A program made the translations under genes and the position numbers. A stretch of DNA of 64,000 bases from Bugula neritina (Eukaryota; Animalia; Bryozoa), in assembly GCA_964035545.1 (NCBI GenBank), contig OZ037767.1, positions 10,240,581 to 10,304,580 of the forward strand, given 5' to 3'. The stretch's first letter is position 1. Every line of letters starts with the position of its first letter. A model generated the notes under the pieces. The model ran no database searches, was not told the DNA's origin, and saw nothing but the letters and a program-made list of their open reading frames with translations. This document shows positions 71-10,184 of the stretch, in pieces.

Positions 71-3000
71 CTTTCGGAGCTTAAGGTGGCCAAAAGAGAA
101 CTTCTTATCCCCTAGATGCCGACCAGGTACGCTGCCAATAAGGCAAACTCTGCAAATAAGATAATGTACTGACAACATTGATTGGACAGAAAGGGGCCAC
201 ACGTGAGAGCCATGTGCAGTTCATCATGTATATTATGTGAAGTTCATTTTGAGAAAAAAAATGTTATTTGCCAATACAGTGGATTTTGAACCTTTAAAGA
301 ACCTGGAGTGCTACAGAGTTTCAAACCCACCTGCGCTTTATAGCAAATTCTTACATACAGTTTTACAACTACATAGTATGGTTATAAATAAGGTAATCTT
401 TGTGCATTATGAGTAGCATGTGGTATGGTACAAGACCTCTAGTGTAATCTATTTAATCAGTAGCTGTTGAGAAACTAAGAATTGAAATCTACAACATTAT
501 TGGTGAGAGTTGGTAGAAACATACCTACATTTAGACATATCATGCTGTCTGATGAGGTCTATCCATTCTGCTATGAGCTTGGACTTGTATCCTGACAAGT
601 ACTCAATGAGATCCGCCTTGAAATTCGTGATTGAATCGCCAGATCCTAGAAACAGCAAAGTGTAGTAAAGAACTAATTATCCAGAATGGTAGTGCAGCAG
701 CAGTAGCAGTAATAGCAGTAATAGCAGTAGTAGTACTAGTACTAGTAGCAGTAATAGCAGTAGTAGTACTAGTACTAGTAGCAGTAGCAGTAGTAGTACT
801 AGTACTAGTAGCAGTAGCGGTAGTGGTGGTGGTGGTGGTGGTGGTGGTGGTAGTAGTGGTAGTAGTGGTAGTAGTAGTAGTAGTAGTAGTACTAGTGGTA
901 GTGGTGGTAGTGGTAGTAGTATATAGTAGTAGAGGTAGACAGAAAGAGAAATAGAGAAGGGGAAGAGAGAGGGGAAGAGAGAGGGGGAGAAAGAGAGGGA
1001 GAGAGAGAGAGAGAGAAAGGAGGGGGGGGAGAGGAGAGAGAACTGAGTAGTTTTACTTACCAGGAGGACACAAAGGGCTGCACCATAGAGCTTGGGTTTT
1101 CTGAAACCAGTCCATAGGAATGAGGTTAGCAGTGGTGATCATAACTCGTATTCCTGTGGTGTATTTGAGTATCACCATCTTTGTGTGGTGAACACCGTAA
1201 GGGATGTCCAATTTAGCCTAACAATTCATACATATAAACTATTAGTGTGGATAGAGGTAACTAGTACGAGTTATACCTATTATATCACTAAGAGAAATGC
1301 TAAGGACTGCCACTTCACAACTATAGCAATTCCCTTTTCTTTATTCACTATAATCAGGAGGTAAATCAACACTAAAAACTGAAATAATGGTTTGCCAACT
1401 ATTTTTGATAACTTTTTATACGTCCATCACCATTTAAAATATTCTATTGCATAAAGCTACCCACTTTATTAAATGAATACAAATTCCTGACTTTCCATAA
1501 ATCAATATCTGCTTGACTGTCAAAACAAAGCAACAGGTCGAAGTTCAAACTTAGTTGGTTTAAGCCAGTCTGTCTTCTTTAACCCAAACTCTGTCTGACT
1601 GTATGTAACTTACACTTATCAAATACTTACTTCTACTATTTTTATATTGCTATTTGAGCCTCTCTGTTCCAAGAGCTCTATACGTGAGTCACCCTTTAGT
1701 CCATGGACCACAGTCATAGGTTTGTTCCGGTCACACGGTTTATACTGTTGTCTGATCCAATCCAAGTCAAACATGTAACTCAGCTATGAAGTAGACCAGT
1801 ACAACAGGCTGTATACACACTGGAATATCTTTTAGAGTTTGTATGTCAAAGCTGTTTAAAGACAAGCTATAGGAACTGCGTAAGCCATAATATACTACAG
1901 AAATAGAATATATTACTCTACATCATACTAGCGCAGGGGTGAGCAACTTCTTTTGCATGAGGGTCAAGTTCAGGGGTCAGCCAAAACAAAGGGCCACACG
2001 ATTGTACACATTAAATTTTATTATAATAAAGTAATTCGTTACCAATACTATACTGTGCTAATCAGAATGCATATAACAGTTTTCACTTATCTTAAGTATT
2101 AAAAGGGCCACTGAAAAATGGGCCAAAGACCACAGGTGGCCCTGGGACCCCCAGTTGCCCGCCCCTGTACTAGAATTATATCACACAAAGTGGTATTTTT
2201 CTCTAAGTGTGTGCAAAGTATGTGTGTGTGCTCGAGCACAAATGATATAACCTCTCAACTGTTTTACAGAGCTATTACTATGCAGGCAAAATGTGCCTTT
2301 ATCTACTGTCAAAACTGACATGTAAATATAGTACAAGACAATATGAGTTCAGCATTTTGTAAAAACTTACAAGGCATGACGATTCCAATTCAGCCTTTGT
2401 TCCATTAATAACATCTACAAAATAATCCAGTTTAAAGAGTAAAGTGACTTGCAATGAATATCAAGTTAATACTTACAACACAGTGTAGACCCAATACTAA
2501 AAATATTTTGCTTGCGGGCTAAATGCATTGGTTAGTATGATTTTTTCAATAAAGTTGCTTTGACAGCTTTTAATGTTTGATAAAAAAGTGATGAATATCA
2601 AAAAGTTTGCAAAGACAGTTTCTTTTCACAGCCAGGTCAAGGTGAAAGTTATTAAGATAGAGAAAGCTAATCAAGTCAGGCAATCCAACCAATATGCAAA
2701 CTTTTGTTGGAAGTCATTACTTGATATAATCAGCTAAATATGACCTGAATTAAAAAGAAATTGGTAAGAATAACAAATTAGTAGATCCAATTCTATCAGC
2801 TCCTAATTTTCAATATGTTTATAAACATATATTATTATAATAACTACCAAATTGCAAAATCTTCCATCTAATTATAATAGCGATTAACTCTTCAACAATA
2901 ACTATGTTTGGTTATTTATTTAAATTATAAAGATTTACTAAAATGCAATTACGAGTTAATTTAAATATAGAGTAAAGATTAGAAATAAAGAGATAAAGTT

Positions 3001-3904
3001 CAAAATCAAAACTCTTTGGTTTCCCTTTTTAACTAGCCTAAGTTCCGAAGGCTTGTAGCAAGATAATCCATATTTTAAAGTCAACTACCTAAGTAGGTTC
3101 ACAATTTCAGTGAGTAAACAGAAAAGATCTAAAGCCTTTACAAGTTATCGAGAGCTTGCATACAACTAATAGTGAAACAGATAACTTACTATAAAGTGTG
3201 AGAGAAGAACCTTGATTATAGGAGTTGTCTATCCCACGATGAACATAAGTGAGATAATAGTTGTATTTATTACAGCTCTGGCTGAGAGCCACTTGTGTTG
3301 CTGGAGATAGTTCGTTAGTCGTGTCCTTATCAGACGTCAGCTGCATATTCCCTGGGCGGATTGAACTGGTACCTGACTCACCACTACCAACACTAGACTT
3401 GGCACAAATCTCATCAGTCCCTTCAGAGCTGTTCTTTCTTTTCCGTGACACTTGGTCTGCTTACAGAAAAGTTATGAGACAACTTTTCTCATAATAAATT
3501 TGATTCTTTCATAAATTGTTCTTAAATTGCACTGAATTAAAGTAGTTTTAAACAACTGCATGTTTTGATGGCACTTCTGTTATGTAAGTTTAAACAAATG
3601 CAATTTTATGCTCAAATTGAAGAACAGCCATATTCAGAAGCAGTGACATTTTGAGCACAAATTACTGGGAAAATTCTTTTCATGGGTTTGGATAATTATT
3701 ACTAATTAAAAGAAGTACTTTTATTAAGCTAAAACAAGTGGTAATATATCAGTAATATCAGTAATATATCAGAAGAAAAAAGGAAATAGCATATATACCT
3801 GAGTGAGCAAGCTCGTTTGGGTGACTAAACTCTTTGAAATGCAGTGGATTTTTCCGGTAGCATTTGCTACCATACTTACATGCAGGTAAACCATCGTCAC
3901 CCAT
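71..3904 (-). CDS. TDP1: Tyrosyl-DNA phosphodiesterase 1, 5' part (7 coding exons; gene continues beyond the window start)
   Basis: Spliced exons 3904-3799, 3456-3190, 2414-2371, 1783-1631, 1217-1061, 645-525, 149-71 are all GT-AG and phase-consistent. Translation includes [33 protein letters not shown]...[20 protein letters not shown] (first HxK..N catalytic motif), [16 protein letters not shown] and [11 protein letters not shown]...FGHLKLRK, collinear with human TDP1 as recalled. Confidence 0.95.
688..1041. repeat. (GTA/GCA/GTG)n trinucleotide microsatellite followed by a GA-rich tract, in a TDP1 intron
   Basis: Directly visible; explains the poly-Val ORF 631..954. Confidence 0.95.
1934..2167. 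mobile_element. Non-autonomous hAT-type MITE (234 bp)
   Basis: Termini CAGGGGTGAGCAACT...AGTTGCCCGCCCCTG; imperfect 8-bp TSD TACTAGCG/TACTAGAA; internal GGGCC motifs typical of hAT/Charlie-like elements. Confidence 0.8.
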
Positions 3905-4857
3905 TTTAACCTACCACACACAAAAACAAACCTATATATATTATATAACATGTATTGACTATACATCATCTTATGAGATAATGAATGAGCCATGCTTGAA
4001 TTAAATAGAAGAAATATAAGTTATACTTAATACTCTTAAGTAGGTTTAAAACCAAAATTTGTATGTTGATATGTAATCAAAGCTGAAAAAACTTCATTGT
4101 AAAACTAAATTACAATAATTAAAATAAATTTATTTGGTTGTAAATGATAATTTCATAGCCATGCTATACACTAAATTAATACATCCAATGATAACATTAC
4201 TTTCTATTCCAGTACAGTTTATGCTGCGACACATGTAACAAACGCTACTTGGTCTTCAAATTATAATAAAGAAAGTCAGGCTCTCAGCATTGTGTGTGCA
4301 GCTAGAGAAATAAGTCTATGAACAGGAATCTGCGTTGAAAAGATTGGTTCCCAAACAATAACGGATAATTATCCCATCTTCGGCTCCAAAGCATTATTTA
4401 GCTTCATACTAAAAGCCTGAGAAAAGACTAAAGAGTAGAATTCACCCTATTTTCACGCCATTACATATGTCAGCTATGAAAGATTTGACTCCTATCTGCA
4501 GTGGCAATAGTTGCACAATGCATGAAATCATAAAAAAATTATTGCACTATCAGTGTTTGCACTCAAAACATATTTAAAATGACAATCACAATAGTTAGAC
4601 TCACAGTTGTATACTAAATGAACTGTTGCATATTAGTAAAGCTTAATGATGCAGGCAATTAATATTATATTAATATTATTATATTATTTATAATAAAAAG
4701 TTGAATAATAATATTATTAGTTTGGTAAACCCTACAATTAATATAATTTTCTGTGCCATATTGATATACATTTAGCTTTACACTAGATAACCGTTAGGAT
4801 TCAGCACTTGAAAATACTTAAAATTAAATAACCACAAGAAGCAGAAACCCTGAAACA

Positions 4858-5420
4858 TGGTGTCATCTCAGTTAGACGTCTCCCAGTTAGACGCTAGGCT
4901 AAATTTCTTACTTGGACGCTTCCCAGTTAGATGCTATTTATTTATTTTAGTGCAGTATGCATATTTTTATGCGCAATTTATTTTAATTTGAACATTTTTC
5001 AAGTATATATGTATATTTAAATAAATTCTAGATTACTAGATTACCTTTAATCTTGAAATAAATTCCTTTGATCTGCATTAACTTATTAAGTTTGCATTTT
5101 TTATACTTCTTGTAGCTTGAAAAAATATTTCATTAACAAGTATTCATTAGAAATAATGTCTATTATTAATATATTACTGATTCTTTGACCCACATAAATC
5201 TGTGAAAATTAGAATATTATTACAGATAATTCATATTAACTATTATTTCATGCTCAGTAATCAATAAAACAGTTATATAAGTATGTATAGGTATACTACT
5301 ATATATATTTTACTAAAACAAAATAGGTCTAAAAGCGTTCATGTGGGAAGCATTTATCTCGGATGAAATCTGACACACAAGTGACACAGTCACTTGCCTT
5401 GCGTGCAAACTGAGACACCA
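4858..5420. mobile_element. Degenerate MITE-like element with subterminal repeats
   Basis: Left end TGGTGTCATCTCAGTTAGACG matches the reverse complement of the right end GCGTGCAAACTGAGACACCA; four AGTTAGACGC-like repeats at 4870-4935; AT-rich core; no clear TSD. Confidence 0.5.
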
Positions 5421-6009
5421 CACTATTATTATCATAATAATCACTTAGAAATTTTATATTAATATTGTAACAGCATAATATTAATTATAATATAAATTAC
5501 AAATATCCATATTTGCATTCTTGGTAATCATAATCATGATAGCGATCTCCATACTGATATTCACTTTCAGATTGAGATGAAATTTAAATTTATTACAATT
5601 ATCATATTCATTATTATAATTAGAATTATAATAAATATAATAATATAATTAACTTTAAGCACTCATTTTAAGTTCAACAACTTGAATTACAAATTCTACC
5701 ATACTCATAGATATAATGATAATACAATGATAAACATAAAGTAAAAGTTGAACATAAAGCTAAACTTAAAGATAAAACTAAAAGTAAAACTCAAAGTCAA
5801 AATTAATTTAATAATTAATAAATTATAAAAGATAATGATAAAATTAAGTGCACACAATCATATTCATTTATCATTATAAATCTCATTTATTACTATTAGA
5901 ATTATTAGACACAATTTCAATTGATGAAATAGATATTAATACTTTAATAGTGTCAATGGTATTACATTAAAAAAACATTTATTAATATGATTATCATTAT
6001 GAATATGGT

Positions 6010-6380
6010 AACGGCCACTGGTGGTTAAAAAATAAACGTTCGAAGTCTAGAGCACCGGAATGATATAATACAGAGCAAAGCTTCGCTCGTTACATCTTTG
6101 AACTGAGCCTGAGCCTTTTTATCAGGAGCTCAGGGTTGCGGGTGACTAATTGCAGAAGTTTCCGATTCTCAAGTTTAGTGTTAGGTCCCTCAGCTCCAAA
6201 CTTGAGAGCTCAAATCACTGAACTCTAAATGGTCTTGTTTAGTTCACTAGCCCAAACTGCTCCACTCTTTCACCCCCAAGTTTGGAGCTGCTTTTAAAAC
6301 AGTGTAATAGGCTGTAGGACTAGGAGCATCAATTAATTTGTATCGTCTTCTCGTTGAACTTGACATGGTACTCATAATGT
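6010..6380. promoter_or_regulatory. Probable bidirectional promoter region of TDP1 and the ASB-like gene
   Basis: Both start-codon exons are preceded by splice acceptors (3911-3912 minus; 12202-12203 plus), so non-coding first exons lie between them. This is a locally CpG-containing island between two AT-rich periodic tracts, the same architecture as the CFAP70/ZW10 promoter. The TSSs are not determined. Confidence 0.35.
6117..6299. mobile_element. Older copy of the fold-back MITE family also found at 45389-45549
   Basis: Left TTTTATCAGGAGCTCAGGGTTGCGGGTGACT and right TCACCCCCAAGTTTGGAGCTGCTTTTAAAA are imperfect inverted repeats and align with the arms of the 45.4-kb copy. Confidence 0.6.
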
Positions 6381-6743
6381 TTGAGTGTACATAGTATTAC
6401 CATTACGGCATTAGTATTACTATTAGTTGTAAAACTGAAAGTAAAAACTAAAAAGGTTCAGGTTGGGTAACTTCAAGTTACTAATTTGTGCATTATCGTT
6501 AAGTCTTTTTGACTGACTGCAGACAAGCATAAGCTTTCTAAAGTGTAAGGAAAAAAGTTATTGTAAGATAATTTAAATTTATGTTATCAAGTATTACTAT
6601 TACTATTAGTATTACTATTACTTTTACTATTAGTATTAGTATTAGTGTTACTGTTAGTATTGATAATCATAATGATAATGGCTGCACCTACACTTACAGT
6701 TACTGGCAATACTATTAGTATTACTAATAGTAATACTAATAGT

Positions 6744-7546
6744 ACTTACATCAAAATCAATGGTGTCATCACGCTAGACCGCCTAGGGATGGCTGGGCGT
6801 TATAGGAGTGCCTCAATTTTTGAACATACTTCTATCCTAAGGACATTGTTCCTGGATACAGTCCCCTGGGTTGGGCATTGGGTACAAAGAGGGTTCATCA
6901 ACTCGTCCAGTGGTTGAGAGGTAATAACAGTAGAGATGGTTGGTTGTTTCTATTTCTTCAGATTCCGTATTGTACAGGGAGAAAACTGTTATGGAAACAG
7001 TTGTCAGTTGTGGGAATAGACGGTGGTTCACTTTTGGTGGTAGCTCTTGTCTGGACTGAGGCCAGAGGTTGACTCATAATTTTATCATAAGATGTGCTGA
7101 GAGTAAGATGTGATTCCTCTTTCGAGAGTATCTTGTGCAGCAGTTTCACTCGAGAGCTCTTCCGTTGCACATCCAGCTGTAGTTGCGTTTCTCATTGGCC
7201 TCTGAGACCTCTCTTTTGCCCTTTAATTCACTGATCATTCTCACCCCTTGATTCGGAACCATTTCTAGAGCCTCTATCTTTCTGTTTGAGCATGGGTCCC
7301 AGGCACATGAGGCATGTTCTAAGTGAGGACAGCAGATAGACTTAAAAGCTATTAGTTGCTCAGTAGAGAGCTCTTTTGATTCTACCAATTTGCTTTCTTG
7401 CACTACATATTTTGTTGGCTATGTGGTACGTGAACTTCATGTCTGACTGTAGTATCACTCCTAGGTATTTTCTTTGATCTGTTTGCTCTGGTACCGTATT
7501 ATTCATTGTATACTGTAGGAATGTGCCCCGAGAAAAAAGAAAACTC
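6744..7546 (-). mobile_element. 5'-truncated, frameshifted LINE (CR1/L2-group-like): RT C-terminus plus 3' UTR
   Basis: Three overlapping minus-strand frames give YTMNNTV...RKYLGVILQSDMKFTYHIANKICSARKQIGRIKR / LIAFKSICCPHLEHASCAWDP...IEALEMV / RVKLLHKIL...FHNSFLP. These match the KYLGV, RP.LEYAS..W.P and SF.P motifs that follow the RT core in non-LTR ORF2. Confidence 0.85.
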
Positions 7547-7926
7547 ATGAATGTGTGTTAAGCACCTTAATCGCACGTTGGGTTTATCCCACAGCTCCTG
7601 TTTTGGGTACCAAAAAACGGCCCACTGGGCACTCTCTGTTTGAGCACGTGAGCCCGATAAAGCAGGCTCGTGTCTTTTACTCATTTAAAGTTCGAAAACA
7701 TGTTGAGGACATTTTGTTCCCGAAGCCTTTAATCATTCGATTTACCGGATAAAACCATGCACATCGAGTGTCAGCTATCCTGAGAGAAACATCAGGGGAA
7801 CCAGCTACTAGGCAGTCTTTCACCCATATGCTTAAGTTTGGTGATCGATGTGAATCGCTGTGAGCCTTCACCAGAGTCCTCTCTGGCTTGGCCTTGCTCA
7901 AGCATAGTTGACCACCTTTTGGTTCT
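7544..7926 (-). pseudogene. Decayed 28S (LSU) rRNA fragment, ~380 bp, domain II region
   Basis: The plus strand matches the reverse complement of conserved 28S blocks in the correct order: CATTTAAAGTT, TAATCATTCG.TTTACCGGATAAAAC, CAGCTATCCTGAG.GAAAC, GGAACCAGCTACTAG, CACCAGAGT..CTCTGGCTT, GCATAGTT.ACCA.CTTT. It has many transitions and two ~8-9 nt deletions in invariant blocks. Confidence 0.9.
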
Positions 7927-10184
7927 AAGAATAATAGTGATAGTGATAGCTATAATCATAGTCATAGTTATAATGATAATTACTTTTGAGTTGTAACCTT
8001 CAACTTAAACTTGTTTAAACTTGAAGGTCTGTTGTCATTGAGGTTGGCTATTGTTAGTGTTACTCTAGATGTATGTCATACTTTTGGCACAAAAATAAGT
8101 TATCACAGTAAATATGTACAAGATTAAGTATTTCATACTGATACTTATATTCATACTTAACTGTTTAGACGATAAAATTAGTTGTAAAATATTAATCTGT
8201 TATTATCATTATGATTATGCAATACTAATACTTCTAATTATACTAATCAAAAGTCAAATGTTGGTCATGGCAAAATGGAAACTGCTTAAACTGCAAATAA
8301 AAATCGTGATCAGGTATAAATTAAACTTGCAATGACAAGGCTAGAGGCTAGATTTTACTCCCAATACTTATACTACTTTAGCAACATTTCAGATTTTAGA
8401 CTTTTCAAATTTCAAGACTTTAACAACCAAGACTCTGGTTAGGGCAATTTTAGAAATCTAATCACATTGTTAACATTGTTGATTAATGATGGTCTAAGCT
8501 TAACTGAAATCAAATCATAGTTATATTTAAAAGTTGGCCAAATCAAATCAATTCTTTTGTAAAAGACATTGAGTCAAGATACGCTGTGGCCTCAAATCAA
8601 CCAGAGTCAATTTGGATTGACTTGCAAGTCTTTAAAACAAGTCAATATGTGCCATAATTGCATATTTATATAGATTTTTTAAAAAAATTCAAATTAGCTG
8701 CATGCATTCTGGAGAGTAAATGAAATGATAATTTTTTTTGAAGGGTTGAGAAAAGTGTCTTATGACTTAAACAAATTAGTAGCTATAAGTTGAACAAACA
8801 ATTCAGTTTATTATTTATGATCCAAGTTCACTTTAAGATGTGCTCATTACTTTAACAGAAGGTTCTGGTACTTAAATTATTATGAAGTATCAAATGGTCA
8901 GAAATTTGTTATAACTGCATTTCATATGTTTATAATCAAGCATTTAGCCATTATTCTTTCTCATATGCCCACAAAAGGCTCACATAGGTCTATAATTTGC
9001 TCTCACGCCCTTGTTGTTAGTGCTCTTAGGTCTATTATTTGGTCTCACACTTATTATTCATTCCCATACTCTTATTTCTCCCTCTTTTATGCTCATTATT
9101 CAGTCCCATACTTTCATTAGGCACTCTCATATTCCTATCATTGGCTCTTCTATAGTCATTCTCTTATGCTTATTATTCTCTCTCATACCCCTATTACTGT
9201 ACTTGCTCTTGCGCCTGATTCTGACTCAATAGTATTTGTGTACACATCACAATATTTGAGCATATGCCAGTTTACTCAGTTCACACTTTTTTGTTGAAGC
9301 CAGTTTTGGAAAGTAATAAAATATCCTAGGGCTTAGATCAGGAGTGTCTAAGCTTTTCAGAGCAAGAGCTAAAGAAGTAGAATATTCCATTGTGAAGGCT
9401 ACAAATTGCAAAATTCAGTTTGAGCTCGTGGCTACAGCACCAGGTTTTTCAAGTTAGTTTGCTCCAAATTCACATCAATAATTACACAATGGCATCCTAA
9501 TAACAATCACAGGCTGCATGTTTTTTAGCATGTATAGAAATAAAGCATTTACATTGAGTGGTTTTCCTTCTCCAATTCATATACAGAGCAAAATAATTTT
9601 ATATATGTTGTGCGTTTGAGGCCAATATAAGTGTTAAACAGGCAGGCTTAAACGATCAAAGTGTTGTATGTACAATCTTACATGCAGTATAATTTTAGAA
9701 TAGCATAATTTAAAAGGGAAACTCTGTCCAAAAATAGCTTTTTGAATAATTTTAAAGCAATTTCTATTTTACTTGAGCTAATTACTGCTATAAGTTAAAA
9801 GTAATATGCTTCAGTGGTCATTGCTGTATTATCCTACAATAGGTTTGAAACAATAAATAGAAGTCTTTTCTTACAATCCTATGTAATAGCATTTCATTTG
9901 AGTAAATAGTAATTTTCTGTAAACTAATCAACAATAACCTTTTGACAGGTTGCAACCAAGTTTGCATTTAAGATTAAATTTTCTTACGCTGACACCCACA
10001 AAAATTGGGTGGTAGTAAATATAATTTAAGTATAAATATGGCCTACATAGCTAATTTATATTTTTAGAAGCGGGGTCAATATAAGTTTATTTTTATTTTT
10101 ATTTGTGCTTCGATTAGCAAGTCATTGGTTACAGGCACTGCACAGAATGAAGTTTAGCAGTTCTAACTAGTGTATGCAAAGGAA

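What the first reader, a model, noticed from the sequence alone, without database searches (positions are those of the whole stretch)
6744..7931. 28S rRNA-LINE chimeric retroposon (candidate rRNA-headed SINE-like element)
Seen: on the minus strand ~380 nt of 28S rRNA (7926-7544) is joined without spacer, in the same sense, to the last ~800 nt of a CR1/L2-like LINE (RT C-terminus plus 3' UTR). No 28S sequence resumes on the far side of the LINE, and the hexamer tract continues on both flanks, with a candidate low-complexity TSD TAATAGT (6737-6743 and 7932-7938). Known: template switching during target-primed reverse transcription makes ncRNA-LINE chimeras (U6-L1), and 28S-derived SINEs are described in a few vertebrates. 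Inference: the LINE RT switched from its own mRNA onto ribosomal RNA. If this is multi-copy with one fixed junction, it is a new 28S-headed retroposon family in an invertebrate.
Basis: partly seen in the sequence, partly recalled or inferred. Interest (0 to 1): 0.8.

Follow-up and report, generated by a model that had tools for sequence, protein, structure and literature searches.

The report
One-off 28S rRNA-LINE retro-chimera
An old, dead, single-copy insertion in a marine invertebrate genome joins a 386-base piece of the animal's own 28S ribosomal RNA head-to-tail to the last 800 bases of a jumping gene (LINE); it is best read as a copying accident of the LINE's reverse transcriptase, a kind of event already known from mammals and fungi, and not as a new family of mobile elements.

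Summary
On the minus strand, window 7929-7544 is positions 952-1354 of the genome's own 3794-nt 28S rRNA (15.8% substitutions, three deletions). It is joined bluntly and in the same sense to window 7543-6744, the last 800 nt of an APE+RT LINE of CR1/L2/Jockey type.

A single retroposition of a chimeric cDNA is well supported:
- The two halves have decayed equally once base class is allowed for (65.7 changes expected, 61 observed).
- Only the composite carries a candidate 9-bp target-site duplication (8/9), and removing it restores one in-phase hexamer tract.
- Neither half has a duplication of its own.
- A short-read contig spans the junction.
- The same genome holds a second, young, independent 28S-to-LINE sense chimera. 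Its 28S part ends exactly at the mature 3' end.

It is not a SINE-like family. No other locus in the 216-Mb assembly spans the junction, and the 28S piece matches only itself and 17 rDNA units.

28S/LINE-1 chimeras (18 loci) were described in primates in 2025. This is therefore a new member of a known kind, with a different LINE type and phylum. Template switching, RNA ligation and read-through cannot be told apart here.

In passing: LINE 3' ends in this genome lie next to ACT/AGT hexamer tracts far more often than chance. The scan had already noted these tracts.

The parts
7930..7938 (-). 5' copy of the candidate target-site duplication (ACTATTATT), the last unit of the upstream hexamer tract
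   Evidence: 8/9 identical to the 9-mer directly after the LINE 3' end. 0.44% of tract 9-mer pairs match as well.
7544..7929 (-). Internal fragment of the host's own 28S rRNA (positions 952-1354 of 3794). It starts just 3' of the GC-rich D3 expansion segment. It is decayed: 61 substitutions in 385 aligned sites, deletions of 8, 9 and 1 nt, one 1-nt insertion.
   Evidence: Substitutions are GC-to-AT biased (G>A 24, C>T 11 against A>G 4, T>C 3). The fragment shares the host-specific variable helix with the own 28S.
7543..7544 (-). 28S/LINE junction. It is blunt: no filler and no microhomology.
   Evidence: three-way comparison with own 28S and the longer LINE copy L056. (contig 7430-7581 spans it).
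6958..7543 (-). 5'-truncated LINE, coding part: the end of the RT domain and the C-terminal region of ORF2, broken by stops and frameshifts.
   Evidence: ORF fragments. (53% and 47% identity to residues 689-739 and 810-875 of an intact 891-aa relative). (77-79% DNA identity to three sister copies).
6744..6957 (-). LINE 3' UTR, ending in the family's terminal short repeat (TTGAT...GATGTAAGT). There is no poly(A).
   Evidence: the 3' ends of L057, L056 and L030 share CCTAGGCGGTCTAGCGTGATGACACCATTGATGTAAGT.
6735..6743 (-). 3' copy of the candidate target-site duplication (ACTATTAGT).
6578..6755 (.). Downstream part of the ACT/AGT hexamer tract into which the composite inserted. The upstream part is 7930-7980.
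   Evidence: Removing the insert and one TSD copy gives one continuous in-phase hexamer tract.

Best explanation
This is a dead, single-copy chimeric retro-insertion made in one target-primed reverse transcription event.

Inferred sequence of events:
1. A LINE of the CR1/L2/Jockey type nicked an ACT/AGT hexamer tract and began copying its own RNA from the 3' end.
2. After about 800 nt, just past the RT-coding region, the reverse transcriptase left the LINE RNA and continued on a 28S rRNA molecule. It did so either by template switching or because the two RNAs had been ligated.
3. It copied 28S from position 1354 back to 952, stopping at the GC-rich D3 expansion segment.
4. The composite cDNA was joined to the target, leaving a duplication of about 9 bp.

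Since then both halves have decayed neutrally by about 13-18%. The element never amplified.

Shown: the anatomy, the uniqueness, the equal decay, the host origin of the 28S piece, and the recurrence of such chimeras in this genome. Inferred: the RNA-level switch itself and the order of the steps.
For: 1. The fusion is blunt and same-sense, with the LINE truncated inside ORF2. The longer sister copy L056 continues upstream as RT.
2. The halves have equal age. Changes per ancestral base class:
   - A/T: 28S 8.5%, LINE 11.1%
   - non-CpG G/C: 28S 20.0%, LINE 16.4%
   - CpG: 28S 28.3%, LINE 38.9%
   No class differs (Fisher P 0.36-0.56). Applying the LINE rates to the 28S composition predicts 65.7 changes against 61 observed. 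The ML terminal branch of the LINE half is 0.13 in a star tree of four copies.
3. A TSD candidate (8/9) lies exactly at the two independently defined ends of the composite. The sequences at the inner junction give no TSD for either half alone. The reconstructed empty site is one in-phase tract.
4. The 28S piece comes from the host: it shares the host-specific variable helix and shows a GC-to-AT decay spectrum.
5. The junction is present in an independent short-read contig.
6. There is a second chimera in the same genome (L061:3001-4413). It consists of 28S 3332-3794 at 98.5% identity, ending at the mature 3' end and not followed by rDNA spacer, then a T-rich linker of about 30 nt, then a 5'-truncated copy of a young LINE family. 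This shows that rRNA, as RNA, gets attached to LINE cDNAs in this genome.
7. [quoted passage not shown]
Against: - The TSD lies in low-complexity sequence and has one mismatch.
- The 3' boundary is not bridged by reads.
- Both ends of the 28S piece are internal to the rRNA, so this locus alone does not prove an RNA origin.
- There is no microhomology or filler at the junction to mark a jump.
- The LINE-half age is an upper bound, because subfamily differences are counted as decay. Equality of ages is therefore compatible with, not proof of, a single event.
- No outgroup genome was available to show an empty site.
- Whether the second haplotype seen in the reads carries the 28S half could not be read. 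Conserved rRNA-like contigs may be filtered by the tool.
Confidence: 0.75

Rival explanations
1. Read-through (5' transduction) instead of a template switch. A 5'-truncated copy of this LINE once sat inside a 28S gene at position 1354 and was co-transcribed with the pre-rRNA. That transcript, recognised by its LINE 3' end, was reverse-transcribed in trans and truncated at 28S position 952.
For: It would give exactly the same anatomy, the same TSD and the same equal ages. LINE-type elements living in rDNA and co-transcribed with 28S are well known (R2; general knowledge). The sister copy at C1:21.36 Mb is 5'-truncated within 4 nt of the same point, as if an 800-nt truncated source had existed.
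Against: No rDNA unit or other locus in the assembly carries this junction or any LINE at 28S position 1354. The four copies form a star tree with no special link between the window copy and the C1:21.36 Mb copy. The second chimera cannot be explained this way, because its 28S ends at the mature 3' end and is followed by a linker that is not rDNA.
Confidence: 0.1
2. Two independent events. A 28S pseudogene fragment already lay in the tract, for example as filler DNA at a break. A LINE later landed at its 3' edge, or the reverse order, with loss of whatever lay between.
For: Dispersed rRNA fragments without any LINE do exist in this genome (C5:12726794, C2:20154691, and a DNA-level 18S-ITS1-5.8S remnant on C2). 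LINEs of this genome favour the hexamer tracts, so two hits at one tract are not absurd.
Against: This reading needs a zero-base gap, the same orientation, indistinguishable ages, no TSD for the LINE alone and a TSD for the composite. Of the six dispersed 28S fragments examined, two (this locus and L061) abut a 5'-truncated LINE in the same sense at 0 and 30 nt, which chance adjacency does not predict.
Confidence: 0.1
3. A member of a 28S-headed, SINE-like non-autonomous retroposon family.
For: It has a head-plus-LINE-tail layout like a SINE. SINE28 shows that 28S can found a SINE (PMC4994717).
Against: The junction and the 28S piece are unique in the 216-Mb assembly. The element is 1186 nt long and its 'tail' is 586 nt of broken ORF plus the UTR. 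The second chimera has a different 28S segment, a different LINE family and a different junction, and is also unique.
Confidence: 0.02
4. Assembly artefact that joins rDNA reads to a LINE.
For: rDNA and repeats are classic places for misjoins.
Against: The 28S piece differs from the rDNA at 16% of aligned sites and in four indels, so it cannot be misplaced rDNA reads. Contigs of a short-read run reproduce 7430-7581 and 7772-8022 exactly.
Confidence: 0.01

Closest known systems
[quoted passage not shown]
   Same: A sense-oriented 28S fragment of a few hundred nt (reported range 50-482 nt, median 269; here 386) is fused to the 5' end of a truncated LINE as one insertion. Fragments are taken from along the 28S, and each locus is a one-off.
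   Different: The LINE here is not L1. It has short direct repeats instead of poly(A) at its 3' end and a CR1/L2/Jockey-type ORF2. The host is a lophotrochozoan (a bryozoan, according to earlier notes of the scan). The target is a hexamer tract, not the L1 TTTT/A motif.
U6/L1 and other bipartite chimeric retrogenes of mammals; WEIRD/MGL chimeras of Magnaporthe (PMC4476161, PMC2104539)
   Same: Same layout: a cellular RNA copy at the 5' side, a LINE 3' part at the 3' side, the same orientation, and direct repeats around the whole. In Magnaporthe, switching occurs at preferred sites of the LINE RNA. Here a sister copy is truncated within 4 nt of the junction.
   Different: U6 chimeras usually carry the full-length small RNA joined at its 3' end. 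Here both ends of the rRNA piece are internal. The Magnaporthe chimeras are numerous (33), while here two were found.
SINE28, the 28S-derived SINE of mammals (PMC4994717)
   Same: 28S rRNA sequence mobilised by LINE machinery. SINE28 derives from the 3' end of 28S, as does the second chimera noticed here (L061).
   Different: SINE28 is multi-copy (27 human loci), transcribed by Pol III, and has no LINE body attached. The window element is unique, comes from the middle of 28S and carries 800 nt of LINE.
rDNA-specific LINEs (R2, R1 and relatives) and their 28S co-transcripts
   Same: 28S sequence directly upstream of a LINE-type element in the same sense.
   Different: Those elements sit inside rDNA units at fixed sites with 28S on both sides. 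Here the locus is on another chromosome-scale contig than the rDNA, 28S lies on one side only, and position 1354 is not a site occupied in any rDNA unit of this assembly.

Membership tests
LINE-mediated bipartite chimeric retro-insertion (cellular RNA + LINE 3' part) | The 5' part copies a cellular RNA, the 3' part is a 5'-truncated LINE reaching the element's canonical 3' end, and the two are fused directly in the same orientation. | tested here: met
   28S 952-1354 abuts LINE at 7544/7543 with no spacer. The LINE ends in the family's terminal motif.
LINE-mediated bipartite chimeric retro-insertion (cellular RNA + LINE 3' part) | A target-site duplication flanks the composite, not the parts. 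| tested here: inconclusive
   a 9-mer, 8/9 identical, lies at the exact ends. Chance within the tract is about 0.4-2%. No TSD exists for either half alone. However, the sequence is low-complexity and carries one mismatch.
LINE-mediated bipartite chimeric retro-insertion (cellular RNA + LINE 3' part) | Both parts were inserted at the same time. | tested here: met
   class-specific divergence is indistinguishable (65.7 changes expected, 61 observed). The LINE estimate is an upper bound.
LINE-mediated bipartite chimeric retro-insertion (cellular RNA + LINE 3' part) | The cellular part derives from processed RNA, not from DNA (no spacer, mature ends). | tested here: inconclusive
   The window piece is internal to 28S at both ends, which is uninformative. 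The second chimera of the same genome ends at the mature 28S 3' end and lacks the rDNA 3' spacer.
SINE or SINE-like non-autonomous retroposon family (rRNA-headed) | Several dispersed copies share one head-tail junction. | tested here: not met
   no other locus spans query positions 388/389; the 28S piece finds only itself and 17 rDNA units.
SINE or SINE-like non-autonomous retroposon family (rRNA-headed) | Short element (typically under 700 bp) with an internal Pol III promoter in the head. | tested here: not met
   The length is 1186 nt. The head is an internal 28S segment. Promoter activity cannot be tested here.
CR1/L2/Jockey-type (APE-bearing) LINE | ORF2 with an N-terminal apurinic-type endonuclease and a reverse transcriptase. 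| tested here: met
   in intact or longer relatives (L035, L032), Exo_endo_phos_2 scores E 1e-12 and RVT_1 scores E 2e-35. tie the window fragment to that ORF.
CR1/L2/Jockey-type (APE-bearing) LINE | The 3' end carries short direct repeats rather than poly(A). | tested here: met
   TTGATGTAAGTTGATGT in the window's family and ACAGAGTGAGTACAGAGTGAGT in the young family.
CR1/L2/Jockey-type (APE-bearing) LINE | Placement inside the CR1 or L2 clade in an RT phylogeny with reference elements. | not tested
   No reference LINE sequences were at hand. The protein search returned only unnamed proteins.
rDNA-specific LINE insertion (R2/R1 type) | The element lies inside an rDNA unit at a fixed 28S site, with 28S resuming after it. 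| tested here: not met
   there is no 28S beyond the LINE. The locus is on contig C3, while the rDNA is on C6, C135 and C9.

The most novel reading that the evidence does not exclude
Two claims together.

First, ribosomal RNA is a recurrent acceptor for template jumps by CR1/L2-type LINE reverse transcriptases in this bryozoan. There are two independent events of very different age. The young one starts at the mature 28S 3' end through a U-rich linker.

Second, these LINEs home to the promoter-proximal ACT/AGT hexamer tracts that the scan has flagged as an unexplained genome-wide feature.

Taken together, the chimeras would be natural snapshots of the first step of SINE birth by a stringent-type LINE. 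The tracts would be LINE landing pads, or even be extended by LINE priming.
Probability: 0.3. Interest if true: 0.5.

Novelty: new member of a known kind. Interest (0 to 1): 0.3.

Why it matters
In itself it is a piece of junk DNA. It has three modest points of value.
- It extends rRNA/LINE chimeras, documented so far for L1 in primates, to a LINE with a non-poly(A) 3' end and to a lophotrochozoan. SINEs with CR1/L2-type tails are thought to arise by just such a jump, and few raw, unamplified intermediates are on record.
- Together with the second, young chimera, it offers a pair of natural products from which the jump rules of this reverse transcriptase could be read: a blunt internal acceptor in one case, the mature 3' end plus a T-rich linker in the other.
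- The flanks point to a link between LINE integration and the hexamer tracts behind promoters in this genome. That link bears on a feature other readers of the scan found unexplained.

Tried and rejected
- Pfam on the three window ORF fragments gave nothing. They are too short and decayed, so homology was shown through an intact relative instead.
- The Rfam-family search of the whole genome ran in a strict mode and listed only four full rDNA units.
- An ncRNA head on the sister copies was looked for with Rfam at E up to 0.1, on L056-L058. None was found.
- The C1:21.36 Mb copy, whose 5' end is within 4 nt of the window junction, has ordinary AT-rich DNA upstream. The tree gives it no special kinship with the window copy. 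A shared truncated source is therefore not supported.
- LINE coding sequence was sought next to the other dispersed 28S and 18S fragments (tblastn with ten LINE ORFs). None was found. One 18S fragment is a DNA-level rDNA remnant with ITS1 and 5.8S.
- A foreign or contaminant origin of the 28S piece was rejected. It shares host-specific variable sequence and a GC-to-AT decay spectrum.
- A G>A excess on the sense strand, as a sign of cDNA editing, is not significant (24/118 against 11/90, P 0.14).
- No TSD was found for the second chimera.
- Joints in the read contigs that skip 1694-1767 nt have sides of only 20-21 nt in a high-copy repeat. They are not empty-site alleles.
- The mir-451 and MIR7502 hits at 6628-6761 are below threshold and reflect the self-complementary tract.
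- The protein word search gave no clade names.
- The organism name (Bugula neritina) comes from earlier notes of the scan and was not tested here.
Full report
**1. What is there**

Read on the minus strand, window 8400-6300 contains the following, in order:
- an AT-rich, period-6 tract
- a 28S-like stretch
- a stretch with broken ORFs that carry LINE C-terminal motifs
- a period-6 tract again

Rfam's eukaryotic LSU model matches the minus strand above its gathering score. A more permissive run gives 178 bits, E 1.3e-45. The well-aligned part runs from model position about 812 to about 1193. The part of the match upstream of window 7930 is low-confidence alignment to the repeat tract.

The assembly (216 Mb, 321 contigs) has its rDNA on contigs C6, C135 and C9, while the window is on C3. 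A full 28S unit is 3794 nt (fetched as L055). Against it, the window fragment is 7929-7544 = 28S 952-1354:
- 324 of 385 aligned sites are identical (p = 0.158, K2P = 0.18).
- The window copy has deletions of 8, 9 and 1 nt and one 1-nt insertion.
- The 5' edge is sharp. The own 28S continues upstream with the GC-rich end of the D3 expansion segment, whereas the window continues with hexamer tract.

**2. The LINE half**

From 7543, the base after the last 28S base, to about 6744, the window matches three other loci at 77-79% identity: C1:11.34 Mb, C1:21.36 Mb and C4:11.47 Mb. It also matches some shorter fragments.

The C1:11.34 Mb copy continues upstream of the junction point with reverse-transcriptase motifs. 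The window copy is therefore a 5'-truncated LINE, not a complete short element.

The genome holds more than 150 related LINE loci, several with open frames of 930-950 aa. One such frame (L035) has Exo_endo_phos_2, Exo_endo_phos and RVT_1 domains. The window's ORF fragments align to its residues 689-739 and 810-875. The window piece is thus the end of the RT domain, the C-terminal region, and a 3' UTR of about 214 nt.

The sister copies end in the same motif...CCTAGGCGGTCTAGCGTGATGACACCATTGATGTAAGT(TGATGT). This is a short direct repeat and not poly(A). I did not place the element in a clade, because the protein search returned only unnamed proteins.

**3. The junction**

A three-way comparison shows the following:
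- The 28S runs up to ...CTCATGAG. The own 28S goes on with ACACCACAAAAGG.
- The LINE starts with TTTTCTTTT. The longer copy has ...AGCAAGATA before it.

There is no filler and no shared base. A 152-nt contig of a public short-read run reproduces window 7430-7581 without a difference, and another reproduces 7772-8022. The junction and the 5' edge are therefore not assembly products. In any case, a fragment that differs from the rDNA at 16% of its sites could not be misplaced rDNA reads. The 3' edge lies in repeat that the tool skipped and is not bridged.

**4. One copy or a family**

The whole element finds only itself across the junction. The 28S half alone, searched with a permissive threshold, finds itself and 17 rDNA units and nothing else. 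The 'new 28S-headed retroposon family' reading fails for this assembly.

**5. One event or two**

(a) Age. I inferred the ancestral state of the LINE half from the majority of the three sister copies. For the 28S half I took the own 28S as ancestor. Changes by base class are as follows:

| Base class | LINE half | 28S half |
|---|---|---|
| A/T | 43/389 | 15/177 |
| non-CpG G/C | 48/292 | 31/155 |
| CpG | 7/18 | 15/53 |

No class differs (Fisher P 0.36-0.56). The LINE rates applied to the 28S composition predict 65.7 changes, against 61 observed.

The higher raw divergence of the 28S half (15.8% against 14.0%) is thus explained by its G+C and CpG content. An ML tree gives a star of four copies with terminal branches of 0.13 (window), 0.097, 0.095 and 0.176. 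The caveat is that the LINE figure is an upper bound on decay since insertion.

(b) Target-site duplication. The 28S start was defined by homology to the own 28S, and the LINE end by sister copies. With these ends, the 9 nt before the composite (ACTATTATT) and the 9 nt after it (ACTATTAGT) agree at 8 of 9. Among all 9-mer pairs between the two flanking tracts, 0.44% do as well. The upstream 9-mer matches 2 of 146 downstream positions, and the downstream 9-mer matches 1 of 53 upstream positions. Removing the insert and one copy gives one continuous tract in a single hexamer phase. The sequences at the inner junction give no duplication for the LINE alone or the 28S alone.

(c) Recurrence. A search with the whole own 28S lists only a handful of fragments outside the rDNA. 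I fetched five of them. One of these, on C2 (L061:3001-3462), is 28S 3332-3794 at 98.5% identity. It is followed, after a T-rich stretch of about 30 nt, by a 5'-truncated LINE in the same sense. That LINE is 97% identical to a young family with an intact 948-aa frame.
- The 28S part ends exactly at the mature 3' end.
- The rDNA 3' spacer (GCGAGCAAACG...) does not follow.
- This chimera too is unique as a chimera.
- Hexamer tract lies on both its sides.
- I found no TSD for it.

It has a different 28S segment, a different LINE family and a different age. It shows that rRNA as RNA becomes attached to LINE cDNA in this genome. Counting the window's own locus, two of the six dispersed 28S fragments examined abut a truncated LINE in sense at 0 and 30 nt. 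The other four have no LINE coding sequence nearby.

**6. Mechanism**

I read the locus as a single target-primed reverse transcription in which the enzyme passed from LINE RNA to 28S rRNA.

The data do not separate three routes:
- a template switch during cDNA synthesis
- prior ligation of the two RNAs
- read-through from a truncated LINE copy that once sat in a 28S gene at position 1354

The third route gives the same anatomy. It is disfavoured by the absence of any such copy in the rDNA and by the second chimera, which it cannot explain. Concerted evolution would, however, have erased an old source, so I keep it at about 0.1.

The stop at 28S position 952, directly 3' of a GC-rich expansion segment, fits an enzyme stalling on structure. 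That is inference.

One oddity remains. The C1:21.36 Mb copy is 5'-truncated within 4 nt of the window's switch point. In Magnaporthe, switches occur at preferred sites of the LINE RNA (PMC2104539). With two cases, this is only a hint of a pause site.

**7. Comparison with what is known**

- Chimeric insertions of cellular RNAs with L1 are long known (U6/L1; PMC4476161, listed).
- A 2025 preprint reports 18 28S rRNA/LINE-1 chimeras in primates. The segments are 50-482 nt (median 269), 83% in sense, and are attributed to ligation or template switching (10.1101/2025.02.02.635956).
- SINE28 is a Pol III-transcribed, multi-copy SINE from the 3' end of 28S (PMC4994717).

The window element matches the first kind in every feature I could test and fails the defining feature of a SINE family. 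What is new is the LINE type (non-poly(A), CR1/L2/Jockey-like) and the host. Earlier notes of the scan name the host as the bryozoan Bugula neritina; I did not test the name. I rate it a new member of a known kind.

**8. Seen in passing**

The first 60 nt after the LINE 3' end carry an A[CG]T-every-six pattern in 5 of 10 copies examined, across two families. The criterion is a score of at least 4, which 1.5% of random 60-mers of the window reach. A sixth copy has the tract on its 5' flank. Other agents of the scan described these tracts behind promoters as unexplained. That LINEs land in them, or prime on them, may bear on that question and deserves a genome-wide count.

The reads also show a second haplotype about 6% different in the LINE half. 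The rDNA array on C6 changes orientation near 7.186 Mb.

**9. Verdict**

- Interest is modest (0.3): an ordinary product of a known process in a new setting, with a useful second example and a lead on LINE targeting.

Noticed in passing
L061:3001-4413 (G000:C2:23512636-23514048, + strand): A second, young 28S-to-LINE sense chimera. It consists of own-28S 3332-3794 (98.5%), ending exactly at the mature 3' end with no rDNA spacer, then a T-rich linker of about 30 nt (L061:3463-3492), then a 5'-truncated copy (97%) of a young LINE family with intact 948-aa ORFs. It is unique as a chimera. Hexamer tract lies on both flanks. No TSD was found.
   Followed up: partly
3' flanks of LINE copies: window 6684-6743; L056:4778-4837; L061 from about 4413; L066; L068; the 5' flank of the copy in L058 (3385-3560): LINE 3' ends lie directly against ACT/AGT-every-6 hexamer tracts. 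Five of 10 copies of two families score at least 4 in the first 60 nt, against 1.5% of random 60-mers of the window. This suggests the promoter-proximal hexamer tracts noted across this genome are preferred LINE landing or priming sites.
   Followed up: partly
L057:3476-4301 (G000:C1:21360699-21361524): This sister LINE copy is 5'-truncated within 4 nt of the point where the window copy switches to 28S. It has ordinary AT-rich DNA upstream. This may mark a pause or switch hot spot in the LINE RNA, or may be coincidence.
   Followed up: partly
window 6751-6994, 7225-7433, 8171-8234: Contigs of run X1 come in two versions of about equal depth that differ at about 6% of sites (15/244 plus a 6-nt insertion; 13/209). 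This looks like a second, highly divergent haplotype that also carries the LINE half. Whether it carries the 28S half could not be read.
   Followed up: no
G000:C6:7113109-7274514: The rDNA array is in two opposed blocks. Units lie on the + strand up to about 7.186 Mb and on the - strand after it, with a partial 28S (1-842) at the turn (C6:7186027-7186868). This is either a real inverted array or an assembly fold-back.
   Followed up: no
G000:C5:12726794-12727063; C2:20154691-20154839; C2:22930138-22930210; C1:12158121-12158193; C2:15827479-15828059; C3:18742377-18742793; C1:35247015-35247691: Other dispersed rRNA fragments were found: 28S pieces at 72-97% identity and 18S pieces at 65-88%. 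None has LINE coding sequence beside it. The C2:15.83 Mb one is a DNA-level remnant with 18S, ITS1 and 5.8S.
   Followed up: partly
window 6371-6441: This short stretch has very high contig depth in all three runs (about 3000-7600). It is a high-copy repeat next to the tract and is the source of the spurious 'skip' joints in the read table.
   Followed up: no
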